Assembly (NCBI GenBank): GCA_907165135.1
Contig: OU015569.1
Span: forward strand, 6,138,001 to 6,202,000
Direction of reading: 5' to 3'
DNA length: 64,000 nucleotides
Origin: Oikopleura dioica
Taxonomy: Eukaryota > Animalia > Chordata
The notes beneath the pieces are model-generated. The model was not told where the DNA came from, ran no database searches, and worked only from the letters and a program-made list of their open reading frames with translations. Both the position numbers and the translations under genes were made by a program. This document shows, piece by piece, positions 19,279 through 23,952 of this stretch (position 1 is its first letter; the number at the start of each line of letters is the position of its first letter).

Positions 19279-20345
19279 ATTTCAACGAACTAACTTGTCA
19301 ATGAAAAAAAAACTCGCTTCATCATTTTCTTACCTTATTTTTGGTGCTAGAGAAACAAAGGATGAATTACTATCGGAATTTTTTGACTGAAAAAAAATTT
19401 TGAAATAATGATGTGTTCTGAAAGCCCATGTCAAAATAAGTCGATCCCTAAATTCCAGGGATTCAATGACTCAAAAAAAAAATCTTCAGCCAAAAAATTC
19501 TTATCGTTATTCATCAAACTTAAACTCCTTATACTTAAATCCAAAGCTCCTCTGAATCAATTCTTCTCCCTCCGCTGCTTCAACTTTTGTTTTCTTCTTG
19601 CTCATTGTGACCTTTTCTATGGAACTTACACAATTCAACCTTTTTCCGCCAAAAAATCCTATCAAGCTGTAGTACGAAAAATGAACTAATTCCGTAACTC
19701 TTGCCAAACCTTAATTTGGTGCTTTTCAAATCGTTAAAACAAAAACTAAAGAGCGCAGATATCTTAATTATCGTTTATCTTTTCGCAAGACATGAATCAT
19801 GTAACTGATAAATGATCTGTTTCCAGTCGCAAAAGAAGTGATCCCGAACCAGGACTTAATCATTTATTTCCTGTAGTTTATCTAACCTTTGTCTTCAAAA
19901 CTCGCTTTATTGTGTTACTGTATTTTATTTAGTGGGAAAACATATCCTGTGTTTTCATAAACTCTTCAGAACAAAAAAATTCATAGAACATTGTGATGAT
20001 ATTGGCTTTTTTCAGATTGAAATATAAAACGACCAACGAAGTATGCTACATATTTCTTTATCCACTCGTAAATTTCCTTCAAGAAACTTGGAATTCTGTG
20101 AATCGGAGTCTTTGACGGATATTTTGAGAATCTGGTCGAGAACTATCTTGAGGCATGTGATACAGGAAAACAAGTTTATTTACTTTTTGTGGCTATCGTT
20201 TCTAAATAGCAAACAGCTCTAGTACTTTGCAAATAACATGCACCGTGCCGCATGTGTAGTTTTAGCGAATCTTTAACCAGAGACAAATAAATAACAGTTC
20301 TATTTCTGTGCCGGCAACTCCACATAGAGATCAGTTTTAATAAAA

Positions 20346-22169
20346 ATGAAGATTGCAACGGCGGTTTTTGCTGTTGGCGTCTTCGCCGATAGAGAGCGAA
20401 GAGGAGCAGGCTCCCTCGAGGAGTGCAAAAGCTACTGCGATGACGACTATGACTACGGAATCCTCACGGCTGAACAGCAGTCTAGTTGCCTGAGCGAATG
20501 TGACGCCATCCACGGTGTCTCAATTACCAGCGGCGGGGACGCCGATTTCTTGCAGTGCGAAGTCTACGAGATCGATCCCTTCAACTTCTGTTGCCCAGCT
20601 GGCATCGATGTCAACAACTACTGGCCAGTTGAAAAGCCGACTCAGCGAGGTCATCGACCCGTCGAACCTGACCAGCAATGTCCTACCGGATGTAAAATTG
20701 CTAGAGAGATCGATCAGTTCGTTTGCGCTTTTTACCAGCGAGTTAGCGAACTTGAGACTATCCTCGTCGACCTGGCCAATGCGCTCAGCTCCGATCTCGA
20801 TGGAATCATGGAACTGCGACAGCAATTTGTTCGTCGTTACCGCGAAGTCAGCAGTAAAAGCCAGCGTTCCATCGAGAAGATCACTGAAATCGGCGAGACC
20901 TTTATCGATATCGTCAAGCTAGGTCTCGAGAATGAAGATCTTATCGATGAAGTCACCAAGGAGATTTCTGACGGAGAGAAAGAGGCCGCGATCGCCAAAG
21001 CCGCCATGGCCAAGCTCAAGGACTTCTGCAAAATCGGTAAGCAGTGTGTGAAGCAGAGCTACTTCCCTCCAGAACTCTTTGGGGGCATTAAAAAGGACTG
21101 CGCCGACTACTACAAGCAGCCATTCTGGACCTCAGCGAATGCCGATGAAGTGTGGAACAACCTTCCTCAGTCCGGTGTGTACCAAATTCAGCCCAACGAC
21201 AACATTGATCCGTTCTTCGTCTATTGCGATCAGAAAACTGCTGGAGGTGGATGGACTCTCATTCAGCACAATGGTATTTCTCGAAAGGAACTTTGGGAAG
21301 AATACAGTACTGGCCAGAAGCAACTCAAGACAGATTGGAATAGAAACTGGGCAAACTACAAGGCTGGGTTCGGTCACATCGCATCAAATGGCGAAGCTGA
21401 TTTCTGGCTTGGTTTGGAGCGAATGCATGTTCTCACAAATCCTAAGAAAAATGGCGGTCAACAGACGTCCCTTCGAATTGATATTGTCGACTGGGAAGGT
21501 GAAGAGTACTTTGGCGAGTATAGCAAGGCTATTATCCAGGGCGAGAGTAGAGACTACCGACTCATCGTCGATAATTTCAGCGGTGTTGGCTCTTACTCTA
21601 TTGGCGATGCGCTCGAAGGTGTTGCTTTCGGAGGTGACCCAAGGCAAAAGGCACACACTCGACAGAAATTCATGAAGTTCTCCACCCACGACAGAGACAA
21701 CGACAAGCTCTGTGCCTGGTCGAAAAACAATATGAGAACTGTTTTCGGACAACGAATTCCCATTTTCAGCGCAGACGATGAAGCCGCCCAATGTTTGGAA
21801 GTTGCTGAGAAGTTCAGCGATTGGGAAGAAAAACTCACCAAGTGGGGCTCGTGCTCTCAACAAGATGGTGCTGGCTTCTGGTACAATCGATGCTCGGCTG
21901 GTAATCTTAACGGACGAGTTTACGGCGAGTCTGGAACTGGCTTCTACGAGCTTAAGACAATCGAGTTGCAGGATGGCATCAGCATGATGGAAAAAGACCA
22001 CGACGATGGTCTGATCTGGGCTTCGCTTGGACGAGGACGAGACTACTCATTCATGATGGCTGAGATGCGAGTCCGACCCAAGGACTTCGTGGGCTACTCA
22101 GCAACTGCGGGTCTTGATATGCTTCGAAACGGCCGATTGATGGACGAAAACAAGGCCAAAAACCATTAG
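20346..22169 (+). CDS. Secreted fibrinogen-chain-like protein (signal peptide, Cys-rich N-terminus, CPTGC ring, coiled coil, C-terminal FReD), single exon
   Basis: 607-aa ORF with FReD motifs KDCADYY, SGVYQIQP, VYCDQKTAGGGWTLIQ, FWLGLERMH, MKFSTHDRDND and GFWYNRCSAGNLNG. Confidence 0.93.
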   Translation: MKIATAVFAVGVFADRERRGAGSLEECKSYCDDDYDYGILTAEQQSSCLSECDAIHGVSITSGGDADFLQCEVYEIDPFNFCCPAGIDVNNYWPVEKPTQRGHRPVEPDQQCPTGCKIAREIDQFVCAFYQRVSELETILVDLANALSSDLDGIMELRQQFVRRYREVSSKSQRSIEKITEIGETFIDIVKLGLENEDLIDEVTKEISDGEKEAAIAKAAMAKLKDFCKIGKQCVKQSYFPPELFGGIKKDCADYYKQPFWTSANADEVWNNLPQSGVYQIQPNDNIDPFFVYCDQKTAGGGWTLIQHNGISRKELWEEYSTGQKQLKTDWNRNWANYKAGFGHIASNGEADFWLGLERMHVLTNPKKNGGQQTSLRIDIVDWEGEEYFGEYSKAIIQGESRDYRLIVDNFSGVGSYSIGDALEGVAFGGDPRQKAHTRQKFMKFSTHDRDNDKLCAWSKNNMRTVFGQRIPIFSADDEAAQCLEVAEKFSDWEEKLTKWGSCSQQDGAGFWYNRCSAGNLNGRVYGESGTGFYELKTIELQDGISMMEKDHDDGLIWASLGRGRDYSFMMAEMRVRPKDFVGYSATAGLDMLRNGRLMDENKAKNH

Positions 22170-23952
22170 ACCGTTCTTACTGTGGGACAACATAATTCTT
22201 TTCTCGAATAAAAAAACTATCAAAAATACTGTTTATCTCCGTGGAGCAAAAAAATCTCTAAAAGGTGTTTAATAACATCTTAACAATAATATGCCCTCGT
22301 CCACAATAAGCAGAGTTCTTGGCCGTATTTTTTTCTATACACTTGTTCCTCATATTATGGGGATTGCTGTAAATTGGCGAGTCGCCACTCACCCGGTCAG
22401 TCAATACTTTTAATGTATAAGCGAAAAATTCACTCGGAAGAATAGCTTGGCCTTTTTAAAGAGCGCCTTACCGCCTTTTTAGGGGTCTTTTTTAACACTT
22501 GTTAACTGACCTTGATCAAGAAATTTCCAATTAAAGAGCGTTTTGAGCTAAATTTTTCATCCGAAAAACGATCTTAAAATGTAACAAATGTACTGAAAGA
22601 AAGGTATTTGTACAGACTGTACTGTCCTACCTTAGACATGGAGCTTTGTTGAGAAAAGGAGAAAAGCGTGATATTGTAAATCAGTGTCGACGCATCAATG
22701 TTACCGCTAATCGTCAAAAACCGGCCTTTAGGGGGAATGCATCGAGCTGTCGGTCTAGTCGACCGTGTGTGGTGGTGGCGCGAAGAGTTTGGTGCGCTGC
22801 CTTGTCACCGCCAAGTGTAGTTCTCGCATGCGTGTCGACGAGATCTATCTCATTTTTCCGCTGCTCGATTGATTTTTCTTTTCGCGTCTTAATTCGCATA
22901 TTTTTGACATTGGGATATGCAATAGTTTGTAAATCTCGAGAGAAATCTGTCAATACGGAAGATTGTGAAATCGAGTAAATTTGAAGACATGTGTCAAGAT
23001 TGAAGAAGTTTAAGTTTTGATGGGAAAAGGTGTGATATCATACCTTATGACTTTCATTCTTTGGTTGTCGAAACTAATTATTTTTTGATAACGATGCAAT
23101 AATAATTTAGAAAAGTATCGAGATAGAATTTTAATGGCTATGAATATTTTTGCAAAAAACGCAATCTTCATTTTTTTAATTTTCAAAAGTAGTGGTTTGG
23201 TTATCACGGAAAGATTTTTATGATAAATCTTTGGATAATAATAATAATCGACTTAAGAACACTCGTGCTTCCATGAGGAACTCAAACAAGAATAAAAATA
23301 TTGTTGTTACTCCTTAAATTCAGCTGAATTTTGCTCGTCACTAAAGCGAGATGCAAACACCAGCGCTTCACCACCGCCACCGTCCGTTGGCAAGCGGCGA
23401 ATGACCTACTTGACTCACATTTTGCTTTTGTCCTTTTCACCGTTGATGCCGCCTCGGGCGTCCCTAAGCCCGACGAATGCGTCGTTGCGAGCAAGCTAAA
23501 GTCGACGCAAAGAAAATTGAGAAATTGAAAATCAGCTCCGATAAGTTAGGCTTGCATGCGACGGCTTTTCCCAATCACTAATTATGCCACCCTAGCTAGA
23601 CATGATCATAAACATTCTTCGGAGAGACAGTGTTGTCGACGACATCGTCTATTGAGATTAGTATCACTGCACCCAAAGACAATAAATTGAGACTGAGGCG
23701 ATCTCGAGTATTTTTCGAGCGAAAGGAACTCCTACTGACACTTTCTTGAAATCGAGTCGTACTTGGAGACAACAACGATTTTTTTGATAAAGAGAGAAAC
23801 TTATATCAAAAGTTTAATAATCCAGGTACAGAAGCACTTTTAAAAGAAGCTTTTATCATTGTTTTTTATTGTGTTTTTTCCGAATTTGTTATTCCTGTCT
23901 GAAATATTTATTTTTATAAAACAAGCCAAATGCCAAATATATTTAATTTAGA

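What the first reader, a model, noticed from the sequence alone, without database searches (positions are those of the whole stretch)
20346..22169. Full-length fibrinogen-chain architecture with an Arg-GHRP knob-like motif in an invertebrate chordate
Seen: R101-G-H-R-P105 (20646-20660), C112-P-T-G-C116 (20679-20693), exactly 111 residues of helical sequence to C228 (21027), C234, then the FReD. There is also a furin-like RERR after the signal peptide. Established: vertebrate fibrinogen chains have CPxxC disulfide rings (CPTGC in the beta chain) separated by 111-112 residues, and thrombin cleavage after Arg exposes the GHRP B-knob. Tunicates lack thrombin-based clotting, although fibrinogen-like chains have been reported in Ciona. 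Inference: a protease-activated, knob-hole polymerising fibrinogen homologue, perhaps for matrix, house or wound sealing. Caveats: the second ring is CX5C, and the knob is only 10 residues from the ring, versus about 60 in the vertebrate beta chain.
Basis: partly seen in the sequence, partly recalled or inferred. Interest (0 to 1): 0.85.

Follow-up and report, generated by a model that had tools for sequence, protein, structure and literature searches.

The report
Larvacean fibrinogen chain with conserved knob
An Oikopleura gene encodes a complete fibrinogen-type chain that keeps both the "knob" sequence and the matching "hole" residues that vertebrate fibrin uses to polymerise, so clot-style self-assembly may be older than vertebrate blood clotting, though cleavage and polymerisation are untested.

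Summary
An unspliced, expressed 607-codon gene (window 20346-22169, +) encodes these parts in order:
- a signal peptide and a conserved RxxR site;
- a Cys-rich N-domain of about 80 residues;
- R101-GHRP;
- a CPTGC ring, a coil of exactly 111 residues, and C228/C234;
- a fibrinogen-related domain (FReD).

The coil aligns ring to ring with vertebrate alpha/beta/gamma coils (hhalign 97.4%, E 1.5e-11). The FReD model (pLDDT 92) has only fibrinogen beta/gamma nodules among its 50 best PDB matches.

- [R/K]-G-x-R-P is kept in all 19 family sequences that cover the site. G, R and P are invariant; x is P, H, Q, E or T, and GPRP is commonest.
- The hole triad (gamma Q329, D330, D364) is invariant. Among 120 FReD domains it occurs only in FGB, FGG, FGL1-type and tunicate relatives.

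New points:
- Non-O. dioica members carry a Cys pair that matches the vertebrate beta201-beta286 disulfide.
- The distance from the knob to the first Cys (10 residues) equals that of alpha-chain A knobs (11-12).
- RGPRP recurs inside the FReD loops of a second larvacean family.

Weak points: no cleavage evidence, no activating protease, and no partner chain. The FReD tree alone does not resolve placement. The held library has no report of this family.

Verdict: a new variant of a known kind. The knob-hole mechanism is plausible (about 0.5) but unproven.

The parts
20333..22219 (+). Unspliced mRNA: 13-nt 5'UTR, CDS, about 50-nt 3'UTR
   Evidence: Metatranscriptome contigs X1 (20347-22146) and X2 (20333-22219) are colinear with no joints. 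The X2 5' end carries ACATGGGG, which I recognise from memory as the end of a template-switch oligo. AATAAA lies at 22207-22212.
20346..22169 (+). CDS, 607 aa plus stop
   Evidence: An allele in X2 differs at 12 sites, 11 at third codon positions, with 2 amino-acid changes, F8L and N272K.
20346..20387 (+). Signal peptide (about residues 1-14, MKIATAVFAVGVFA)
   Evidence: Read from the sequence. A hydrophobic N-terminus is kept in all full-length homologues. No signal-peptide predictor was available.
20391..20402 (+). R16-E-R-R19, a proprotein-convertase-type RxxR site just after the signal peptide
   Evidence: R16 is invariant and R19 is kept in at least 90% of 15 homologues (RERR, RKRR, RSKR, RSTR and others). 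Cleavage is inferred.
20403..20645 (+). Cys-rich N-terminal domain (residues 20-100; 7 Cys) of unknown fold
   Evidence: C31, C48, C71 and C83 are invariant. No Pfam hit. Atlas feature scores of about 0.53 are not meaningful. Found only in this family.
20646..20660 (+). Knob-like motif R101-G-H-R-P105; proposed cleavage between R101 and G102
   Evidence: G102, R104 and P105 are invariant. R101 is R or K. Position 103 is P, H, Q, E or T in 15 full-length sequences and 4 fragments. Compare Latimeria FGA RGPRPVEPG and FGB RGHRP[VLI].
20679..20693 (+). First disulfide-ring motif, C112-P-T-G-C116
   Evidence: C112, G115 and C116 are invariant. Aligns to the CPTGC/CPSGC/CPTTC rings of vertebrate beta/alpha/gamma chains.
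20724..20726 (+). C127, an invariant extra Cys 11 residues into the coil, with no vertebrate counterpart
   Evidence: Its partner is unknown. It makes the Cys count even if paired with the 7-Cys N-domain (inference).
20694..21026 (+). Coiled-coil segment of 111 residues between the rings
   Evidence: Spacing is 111 in 8 of 9 family members checked and 110 in one, against 111 in FGA and 110-112 in FGB. hhalign against the vertebrate coils gives 97.4%, E 1.5e-11, ring to ring.
21027..21047 (+). Second ring, C228-x5-C234. S238 replaces the third Cys found in other family members.
21084..22088 (+). Fibrinogen-related domain (residues 247-581)
   Evidence: Pfam E 2e-42. phmmer against PDB: gamma 1e-34, beta 2e-26, FGL1 1e-19, angiopoietin 2e-15. 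AF2 pLDDT 92.3. The 50 best Foldseek matches are all fibrinogen beta/gamma nodules.
21696..21704 (+). Calcium-site aspartates D451 and D453 (gamma D318 and D320)
   Evidence: Invariant in the family and D-D in all named FReDs compared.
21708..21845 (+). 46-residue family-specific insertion in the calcium loop, with the conserved C456/C483 pair
   Evidence: Absent from vertebrate chains and kept in all family members. Modelled at pLDDT above 90 as a hairpin plus three helices. It is coding, not an intron.
21861..21866 (+). Q506-D507, equivalents of hole residues gamma Q329-D330 and beta E397-D398
   Evidence: Invariant in the family.
21999..22007 (+). H552-D553-D554. D553 is the equivalent of hole residue gamma D364 / beta D432.
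   Evidence: Invariant in the family.

Best explanation
What it is (shown or near-certain). The gene encodes a secreted, full-length fibrinogen-type chain of a larvacean tunicate. The organism is Oikopleura, of the O. dioica species complex. The chain has a signal peptide, a CPTGC ring, a 111-residue coil homologous in register to the vertebrate fibrinogen coil, a second Cys ring, and a calcium-binding FReD of the fibrinogen beta/gamma type.

How it probably works (inferred).
1. After secretion and probable convertase trimming at RERR, three copies form a parallel coiled-coil rod. Two cyclic disulfide rings clamp the rod. No second chain type was found for O. dioica, so a homotrimer is assumed.
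2. A trypsin-like extracellular protease cuts between R101 and G102, in the flexible linker just before the first ring. This creates a new N-terminus, G-H-R-P; in most relatives it would be G-P-R-P.
3. This knob inserts into the acidic pocket (Q506, D507, D553) of FReDs on other molecules, as fibrin A:a and B:b bonds do, and links the rods into a polymer.
4. The Cys-rich N-domain plays the part of a large fibrinopeptide-like mask. It may stay tethered through C127.
For: Architecture and homology: (hhalign 97.4%, E 1.5e-11).

Beta-type extra disulfide. The third ring-region Cys (C238) and a FReD Cys (about position 354) are present together in all 12 non-O. dioica members and absent together in the 3 O. 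dioica-clade members. They align with beta201 and beta286.

Knob.
- G, R and P are invariant, the preceding residue is R or K, and only position 2 varies. Position 2 is also the one that separates vertebrate A (GPR) from B (GHR) knobs.
- Likeness runs past the tetrapeptide: RGHRPVEP here against RGPRPVEP in Latimeria FGA, and GHRPIAPG in a relative against GHRPLSPG in frog FGB.
- The knob-to-first-Cys distance is 10 residues, against 11-12 in FGA.
- The motif is essentially confined to fibrinogens and larvacean FReD proteins among 240 proteins.

Hole. The Q-D...D triad is invariant. Among 120 FReD domains it is found only in FGB, FGG, FGL1-type and tunicate relatives. It is absent from FGA alphaE, angiopoietin-like and FGL2-like domains, and from 79 of 80 unnamed FReDs.

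Expression and constraint.

The linker at residues 93-123 has pLDDT below 50 (weak evidence, because the whole model was poor).
Against: - There is no direct evidence of cleavage or polymerisation.
- No activating protease was identified, and tunicates are described as lacking a coagulation system (PMC5465252).
- The Ciona full-length fibrinogen is reported to lack thrombin sites (Doolittle 2012, as paraphrased in PMC8037105).
- The piece before the knob is an 80-residue Cys-rich domain, not a short acidic fibrinopeptide.
- Gamma H340 is Ser and gamma Y363 is His here.
- A 46-residue insertion sits in the calcium loop beside the pocket.
- FGL1 and other tunicate FReDs carry the triad without known polymerisation, so the triad alone is not sufficient.
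- Positions E, Q and T at knob residue 2 do not occur in the vertebrate FGA/FGB sequences fetched here, which have P, N or H.
- No partner chains or dimer-forming N-terminal disulfides could be established.
- The FReD tree does not reject alternative placements (AU p 0.13 with FGB, 0.18 with angiopoietin-like).
Confidence: 0.5

Rival explanations
1. A non-polymerising oligomeric FReD ligand or lectin, in the manner of FGL1, angiopoietins or ficolins. The coil only builds a trimer that presents three FReDs to a cell receptor or a microbial or matrix ligand. RGxRP is then a structural linker, or a docking site for something else, and is never an N-terminus.
For: - Most invertebrate FReD proteins are recognition molecules (established knowledge).
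- The nearest non-larvacean relative in the tree is a Styela protein annotated FGL1-like, which has a coil but no knob.
- FGL1 shares the acidic triad.
- Tunicates are said to lack coagulation (PMC5465252).
- The AU test does not reject a grouping with angiopoietin-like FReDs.
Against: - It does not explain why G, R and P are invariant after a basic residue, in exactly the pattern of fibrin knobs. It also does not explain why the likeness extends to RPVEP / RP[LI]xPG.
- The pocket keeps the peptide-binding acidic triad. Per established knowledge of ficolin and tachylectin-5A structures, acetyl-binding lectins use aromatic residues there. 79 of 80 unnamed FReDs lack the triad.
Confidence: 0.3
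2. The knob acts without cleavage, or the cleaved N-domain stays attached. RGxRP is an internal ligand for FReD pockets or for the Cys-rich N-domain. It would mediate constitutive head-to-tail or auto-inhibitory contacts rather than protease-triggered ones.
For: - RGPRP also lies inside the FReD loops of the larvacean two-FReD family, where it is not near an N-terminus.
- C127 plus the 7 N-domain Cys give an even count, which fits a tethered N-domain (inference).
Against: In solved fibrin complexes the free alpha-amino group of Gly1 is essential for binding (established knowledge; the peptide-complex structures are among the best matches). The conserved basic residue just before the Gly points to cleavage.
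Confidence: 0.1
3. R101-G-H-R104 is a second RxxR proprotein-convertase site, cut after R104. The motif would be a processing signal and not a knob.
For: R/K-x-x-R fits the minimal convertase motif, and a true RxxR site is conserved after the signal peptide.
Against: P105 is invariant at what would be P1'. Pro at P1' is strongly disfavoured by serine proteases, including furin (established knowledge). The same Arg-Pro bond is the uncleaved part of vertebrate knobs.
Confidence: 0.05
4. The knob likeness is convergent or a neutral relic with no present function. The protein is just a structural matrix trimer.
For: The motif is short. No protease or polymer is known.
Against: - The motif is conserved across sequences only 43-49% identical overall.
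- The segment at residues 93-116 has higher mean column identity (0.74) than the N-domain (0.51) or the coil (0.62).
- The motif recurs in a second larvacean FReD family.
Confidence: 0.05

Closest known systems
Vertebrate fibrinogen B-beta chain (FGB)
   Same: - R-GHRP motif.
- CPTGC ring (CPNGC in shark FGB, as in most family members).
- A coil of 110-112 residues, and a second ring followed after three residues by a Cys paired with a FReD Cys (beta201-beta286 type, in the non-O. dioica members).
- Calcium-site DxD, the E/Q-D...D hole, and extra residues in the calcium loop.

   Different: - The knob lies 10 residues before the ring, not 63-65.
- An 80-residue Cys-rich domain precedes it instead of a fibrinopeptide.
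- The second ring is C-x5-C, not C-x3-C.
- There is an extra C127 and a 46-residue disulfide-bearing insertion.
- The His after the hole Cys is Ser here.
- No alpha or gamma partner was found.
- FReD sequence scores are higher to gamma than to beta. A clade with FGB is neither recovered nor rejected.
Vertebrate fibrinogen A-alpha chain N-terminus (A knob, GPR)
   Same: Most family members read R-GPRP-L-A-P, and Latimeria FGA reads R-GPRP-V-E-P. The knob is 10-12 residues from the first downstream Cys in both. Ring spacing is 111.
   Different: In FGA the first Cys after the knob (human Cys28, from memory) is outside the ring, and the ring follows about 18 residues later. Here the first Cys is the ring itself. 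The FGA alphaE FReD lacks the hole triad.
Vertebrate fibrinogen gamma chain (FGG)
   Same: It gives the best sequence and fold matches for the FReD (1e-34; TM 0.87 normalised to the human gamma nodule 9khc). Chicken gamma aligns from the ring through the coil. The Q-D...D triad is identical to gamma Q329, D330 and D364.
   Different: Gamma has no knob and no beta201-286-type disulfide. It has H340 and Y363 where this protein has S517 and H552.
Ciona 'full-length fibrinogen-like' protein (Doolittle 2012, J Innate Immun 4:219)
   Same: A tunicate protein with a vertebrate-fibrinogen-like overall design. This is known to me only through PMC8037105 and memory; the paper itself is not in the held library.
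   Different: It is reported to lack thrombin cleavage sites (PMC8037105). The larvacean family keeps an R-G-x-R-P motif. I could not fetch the Ciona chains to compare them. The ascidian relatives found here (Styela P0031 and P0041) have no knob motif and incomplete rings.
FGL1 (hepassocin) and the Styela FGL1-like coil-FReD protein
   Same: They fall on the same side of the main FReD split. Styela P0031 is the nearest non-larvacean relative (support 97/89). It shares the acidic triad, and P0031 shares the beta201-286-type Cys pair and a coil of about 108 residues.
   Different: They have no CPxxC rings, no knob motif, no N-domain and no calcium-loop insertion.

Membership tests
Fibrinogen chain (vertebrate alpha/beta/gamma type) | N-terminal CPxxC disulfide-ring motif | tested here: met
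   C112-P-T-G-C116. The Cys residues and the Gly are invariant in 15 homologues, and the motif aligns to vertebrate rings.
Fibrinogen chain (vertebrate alpha/beta/gamma type) | Coiled coil of about 111 residues between two rings, homologous to Fib_alpha | tested here: met
   111 residues, against 111 in FGA and 110-112 in FGB. hhalign 97.4%, E 1.5e-11, ring to ring. The Pfam Fib_alpha match is in register but below the gathering score (26.2 against 29.9).
Fibrinogen chain (vertebrate alpha/beta/gamma type) | Second ring C-x3-C | tested here: not met
   The ring is C228-x5-C234. hhalign bridges it to C-x3-C with a 2-residue gap. The following x3-C of beta chains is present in 12 of 15 family members but is Ser in this protein.
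Fibrinogen chain (vertebrate alpha/beta/gamma type) | C-terminal FReD of beta/gamma type with the calcium-site DxD and two canonical disulfides | tested here: met
   The Cys pairs 252/294 and 503/516 are conserved.
Fibrinogen chain (vertebrate alpha/beta/gamma type) | Polymerisation hole residues (gamma Q329, D330, D364 / beta E397, D398, D432) | tested here: met
   Q506, D507 and D553 are invariant. Two neighbouring residues differ: H340 is Ser and Y363 is His.
Fibrinogen chain (vertebrate alpha/beta/gamma type) | Arg-Gly-(Pro/His)-Arg knob exposed by a serine protease | tested here: inconclusive
   The motif is present and conserved. Cleavage and exposure cannot be tested with these tools.
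Fibrinogen chain (vertebrate alpha/beta/gamma type) | Heterotrimer of three paralogous chains, dimerised by N-terminal disulfides | tested here: inconclusive
   - There is no paralogue in the 64-kb window.
- In the exhaustive profile search of 1.84 billion proteins, the family's coil-and-ring design appears only in this family and its fragments. A second coil-ring family turned up only in unnamed marine metatranscriptomes.
- For O. dioica only this chain and a coil-less two-FReD protein carry a name.
- The whole genome could not be searched.
Fibrinogen chain (vertebrate alpha/beta/gamma type) | FReD groups phylogenetically with FGA/FGB/FGG | tested here: inconclusive
   The best tree puts it on the fibrinogen/FGL1 side of a split with support 93/94. 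AU tests reject neither a clade with FGB (p 0.13) nor one with angiopoietin-like FReDs (p 0.18).
Fibrinogen chain (vertebrate alpha/beta/gamma type) | Thrombin as activator; factor XIII Gln/Lys cross-link sites | not testable with these tools
   No genome-wide search was possible. The C-terminal tail has no obvious Gln-Lys donor-acceptor pair like the gamma chain's (my reading). Earlier scan notes list trypsin-like proteases and a transglutaminase in this genome (unchecked).
Oikosins (Oikopleura house proteins) | Identified in the house proteome, or expressed in the oikoplastic epithelium | tested here: inconclusive
   The house-proteome paper (PMC3390340) has no mention of fibrinogen, coiled coil or FReD in its main text. 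Its supplements and gene ids were not checked. No expression-site data were obtained.

The most novel reading that the evidence does not exclude
Fibrin-type knob-hole polymerisation predates vertebrates, or was assembled in the tunicate-vertebrate ancestor. Larvaceans would keep a single-chain, probably homotrimeric, proto-fibrinogen. Its R|G-(P/H)-R-P knob would be unmasked by a non-thrombin trypsin-like protease and would dock into beta/gamma-type holes. The same RGPRP module, embedded in the loops of a second larvacean FReD family with intact holes, would make this a small knob-hole assembly system for extracellular material (plug, matrix or house).
Probability: 0.35. Interest if true: 0.9.

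Novelty: new variant of a known kind. Interest (0 to 1): 0.78.

Why it matters
The accepted picture is that thrombin-triggered fibrin polymerisation is a vertebrate invention. In that picture tunicates have no coagulation system (PMC5465252) and only a fibrinogen-like protein without cleavage sites (Doolittle 2012, via PMC8037105).

Here a tunicate family keeps the knob sequence, the tether length and the hole residues together, under purifying selection. The knob is GPRP in most members, the same sequence as the classic synthetic inhibitor of fibrin polymerisation.

That makes the origin of knob-hole assembly testable with simple experiments: peptide binding, limited proteolysis, and N-terminomics in a laboratory-cultured animal. 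If the experiments are positive, the protein offers a simpler, probably single-chain model of fibrin assembly and a hint at the ancestral chain. If they are negative, they would show that the motif and the pocket had another ancestral use.

Tried and rejected
- **Unspliced intron.** I asked whether the 46-residue FReD insertion is an unspliced intron. It is not: RNA contigs are colinear, and the insertion with its Cys pair is conserved in all homologues.
- **Tandem partner chains.** tblastn of the protein against the window found only the gene itself.
- **Full-length AF2 model.** With a 15-sequence alignment it gave pLDDT 42 and was used only for the remark on the disordered linker. The FReD-only model with 62 sequences worked.
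- **Identity of the N-domain.** There is no Pfam hit. Atlas scores of about 0.53 (PAN-like leads) are not meaningful. A region search found only the family itself.
- **Coil-bearing family 2 in O. dioica.** A profile search returned no named O. dioica member. tblastn of family-2 N-termini against the O. dioica two-FReD locus L001 found nothing upstream.
- **Reads from the species-labelled 2026 RNA runs.** None fell on the gene at 95% likeness or better. The labelled organism is probably another cryptic lineage, so this says nothing about expression.
- **Synteny with the Bergen O. dioica locus.** Only the gene itself matches.
- **Rfam around the gene.** Nothing was found. Neighbouring ORFs have no Pfam domains.
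- **FReD phylogeny as an arbiter.** AU tests could not reject competing placements. The test against an FGL2-like grouping did not finish.
- **The two key Doolittle papers** (PMC6741517, PMC3575912) are not held.
Full report
**1. The observation**

Window 20346-22169 (+) is one open frame of 607 codons. A script count gives these positions:
- RGHRP at residues 101-105 (nt 20646-20660);
- CPTGC at residues 112-116 (nt 20679-20693);
- further Cys at 127, 228 (nt 21027) and 234;
- exactly 111 residues (117-227) between C116 and C228;
- RERR at residues 16-19, after a hydrophobic N-terminus.

Pfam reports Fibrinogen_C (E 2e-42). It also reports an in-register but sub-threshold Fib_alpha match: residues 110-229 against profile positions 14-133, 26.2 bits against a cut-off of 29.9.

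**2. The gene is real, unspliced and constrained**

- Nineteen marine metatranscriptome runs hold the sequence.
- Two of their contigs lie colinearly on 20347-22146 and 20333-22219 without any joint.
- One contig starts with ACATGGGG, which I recognise from memory as the end of a template-switch oligo. That places the cap site near 20333, 13 nt before the ATG.
- AATAAA lies at 22207-22212.
- That contig differs from the window at 12 sites, 11 of them third codon positions, with two amino-acid changes, F8L and N272K.
- Species-labelled 2026 RNA runs gave no reads on the gene at 95% likeness or better. The O. dioica sequences in public databases are only 71-77% identical to this protein, so I read the blank as a different cryptic lineage, not as silence.

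**3. The family**

A word-indexed search found two O. dioica-type orthologues at 71-77% identity. One is an NCBI O. dioica 'unnamed protein product'. It also found about a dozen full-length proteins at 43-49% identity from marine metatranscriptomes. An exhaustive profile search of 1.84 billion representatives added only fragments of the same family. A search restricted to residues 20-250 found nothing outside the family.

So the N-domain, knob, ring and coil design is known only from O. dioica and from unnamed marine, presumably larvacean, transcripts.

The Bergen O. dioica genomic copy (L002 2656-4477) has a one-base frame shift relative to this window. The public 567-aa model skips 39 coil residues to get round it.

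**4. Coil and rings**

Ring spacing is 111 in eight of nine family members checked and 110 in one. It is 111 in three vertebrate FGA sequences and 110-112 in five FGB sequences fetched here.

A profile of the family's knob-to-ring-2 segment aligns to a profile of vertebrate alpha, beta and gamma coils with 97.4% probability and E 1.5e-11. The alignment puts CPTGC on CPTGC, C228 on the first ring-2 Cys, and C234 on the second ring-2 Cys across a 2-residue gap.

Twelve of the fifteen family members read C-x5-C-x3-C and carry one more Cys in the FReD loop between GFG and (D/E)(Y/F)W. The three O. dioica-clade proteins lack both. In an alignment with vertebrate chains these two Cys fall on the beta-chain Cys pair that I know as beta201-beta286. 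Gamma lacks this pair. Loss of both together argues that they pair with each other.

The ring variant CPNGC, used by most family members, is also the ring of shark FGB.

C127 is invariant and has no vertebrate counterpart. Together with the seven N-domain Cys it gives an even count, so an N-domain-to-coil tether is possible. That is inference only.

**5. The FReD**

- phmmer against PDB sequences ranks fibrinogen gamma (1e-34) ahead of beta (2e-26), FGL1 (1e-19), and angiopoietins and ficolins (1e-15 or weaker). The chicken gamma alignment runs from the ring through the coil.
- An AlphaFold model of residues 240-590, built with a 62-sequence alignment, has mean pLDDT 92.3 and pTM 0.91.
- Its 50 best Foldseek matches in the PDB are all fibrinogen gamma or beta nodules. 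The first is the human gamma nodule with GPRP bound (TM 0.87 normalised to the target).
- The calcium-site aspartates are kept.
- A 46-residue insertion with a conserved Cys pair sits in the calcium loop. It is confidently modelled as a hairpin plus three helices.
- I could not inspect coordinates, so I do not know whether the insertion lines or covers the pocket.

**6. Hole residues**

In a 120-domain alignment, all 14 full-length family members analysed read D-D-C-Q-D-R-C-S-H-D-D. This is at the columns of gamma D318, D320, C326, Q329, D330, K338, C339, H340, Y363, D364 and N365.

The triad [E/Q]-D...D occurs in:
- FGB (E-D...D) and FGG (Q-D...D);
- a fish FGL1 (E-D...D), and an unnamed protein (P0109) that groups with FGL1;
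- the larvacean families and one Styela protein.

A bat FGL1 and one family-2 protein read E-E...D.

The triad is absent from FGA alphaE, angiopoietin-like and FGL2-like domains, and from 79 of 80 unnamed FReDs. P0109 is the one exception.

So the pocket chemistry is of the fibrinogen type, although the triad alone does not prove polymerisation.

**7. The knob**

G102, R104 and P105 are invariant in 15 full-length proteins and in four more N-terminal fragments. Residue 101 is R or K. Residue 103 is P (most), H, Q, E or T. The variable position is the one that separates vertebrate A (GPR) from B (GHR) knobs.

Likeness extends further along the chain:
- the window has R-GHRPVEP and Latimeria FGA has R-GPRPVEP;
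- a close relative has GHRPIAPG and frog FGB has GHRPLSPG.

In vertebrate FGA the A knob is 11-12 residues from the first downstream Cys, so the tether length is ordinary.

Among 240 FReD-related proteins the pattern [RK]G.RP occurs only in this family, in vertebrate FGA and FGB, in a larvacean two-FReD family, and once elsewhere. The segment at residues 93-116 is more conserved (mean column identity 0.74) than the N-domain (0.51) or the coil (0.62).

An alternative reading is a convertase site, RxxR, cut after R104. The invariant Pro at P1' makes this unlikely (established protease specificity).

**8. Phylogeny**

A careful ML tree of 73 FReDs gives the following:
- The family is joined with a short coil-less larvacean paralogue (P0034), and next with a Styela 'FGL1-like' coil-FReD protein (support 97/89).
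- A split with support 93/94 puts these, the other tunicate chains, FGA, FGB, FGG and FGL1 on one side. Angiopoietin-like, FGL2-like, ficolin/FIBCD1-like and other invertebrate FReDs lie on the other.

AU tests reject neither family+FGB (p 0.13) nor family+angiopoietin-like (p 0.18). The FReD tree alone is therefore weak. The assignment rests on the coil homology, the rings, the disulfide pattern, the pocket, and the sequence and fold scores together.

**9. Partner chains**

The window holds no paralogue.

A second family, which I call family 2, has a CPN[IM]C ring, a coil of 112-116 residues, C-x5-C-x5-C, a FReD with the triad, and a Tyr/Asp-rich tail. It has no knob. It exists in marine metatranscriptomes (P0169, P0188, P0075, P0201), but no named O. 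dioica member was found.

Its FReD groups (100/96) with an O. dioica two-FReD secreted protein that has no coil.

I therefore take a homotrimer as the default for O. dioica, with low certainty. The whole genome could not be searched.

**10. Mechanism proposed**

Shown: the secreted-protein features, the fibrinogen-type rod and nodule, the conserved knob-like motif in a linker, the conserved pocket, and expression.

Inferred, in order:
1. convertase trimming at RERR;
2. trimer formation, clamped by two cyclic disulfide rings;
3. cleavage at R101|G102 by a trypsin-like protease;
4. docking of G-H-R-P into the pockets of other molecules, giving polymers;
5. the N-domain acting as a mask.

Earlier scan notes list several secreted trypsin-like proteases and a transglutaminase in this genome, and the house proteome contains trypsin-like domains (PMC3390340). 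These are leads only.

**11. Literature**

- The held library has no paper linking Oikopleura or larvaceans to a fibrinogen chain of this kind.
- Doolittle's 2012 Ciona paper is not held. A review paraphrases it as a full-length fibrinogen without thrombin cleavage sites (PMC8037105).
- Tunicates are described as lacking a coagulation system (PMC5465252).
- The main text of the Oikopleura house proteome paper does not mention fibrinogen domains.
- The scan noted one other FReD-containing protein elsewhere in this genome, but not this gene.

**12. Verdict**

The architecture claim is very probably right. The knob-hole mechanism has passed every sequence-level test available, but it lacks any direct evidence.

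This is a new variant of a known kind. It is of high interest to people who study the origin of clotting, because it is cheaply testable.

Noticed in passing
L001 6001-8297 (O. dioica FN655509.1); proteins P0195, P0197, P0203, P0037: A secreted larvacean protein with two tandem FReDs and a Tyr/Asp-rich tail carries R-G-P-R-P inside FReD loops. It occurs in both domains of P0195 and, in domain 1 only, in the 38%-identical relative P0203. Both FReDs keep the E/Q-D...D hole triad. The motif is not near an N-terminus here, so it would need an internal cut to act as a knob.
   Followed up: partly
Proteins P0169, P0188/P0138, P0075, P0201 (marine metatranscriptomes): A second fibrinogen-like chain family. 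It has an upstream Cys, a CPN[IM]C ring, a coil of 112-116 residues, C-x5-C-x5-C, a FReD with the beta286-like Cys and the hole triad, and a Tyr/Asp-rich acidic tail. It has no knob motif. Its source organisms are unknown and no named O. dioica member was found.
   Followed up: partly
window 22678-22775: Reads from two species-labelled RNA runs match only this 98-nt piece, at 95-99% likeness. On both sides they run on into sequence that is not in the window. It is probably a conserved exon of a neighbouring gene read from another lineage, or a repeat. Rfam found nothing and no long ORF covers it.
   Followed up: partly
L002 2656-4477 (O. dioica FN655605.1): The Bergen-assembly orthologue has a one-base frame shift near codon 240 relative to this window. 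The public 567-aa model removes 39 coil residues as a false intron. Flanking genes (a TSP1/Ig gene and a TTL gene) are not found next to the gene in this window, so local synteny is not kept.
   Followed up: yes
Protein P0043 (213 aa; family N-terminal fragment): A homologue's transcript or genomic fragment has about 80 unrelated residues inserted right after the RxxR site. This looks like a retained intron, so other species may have an intron where this gene has none.
   Followed up: no
window 20391-20402 and homologues: A convertase-type RxxR site lies only 2-15 residues after the predicted signal-peptide end and is conserved across the family. It implies a very short propeptide of unclear purpose.
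   Followed up: partly
Protein P0034 (338 aa, marine metatranscriptome): The closest paralogue-like relative of the family's FReD has no coil. It shares a long Cys-bearing insertion in the calcium loop but has lost the Q-D of the hole (it reads E-Q there).
   Followed up: no
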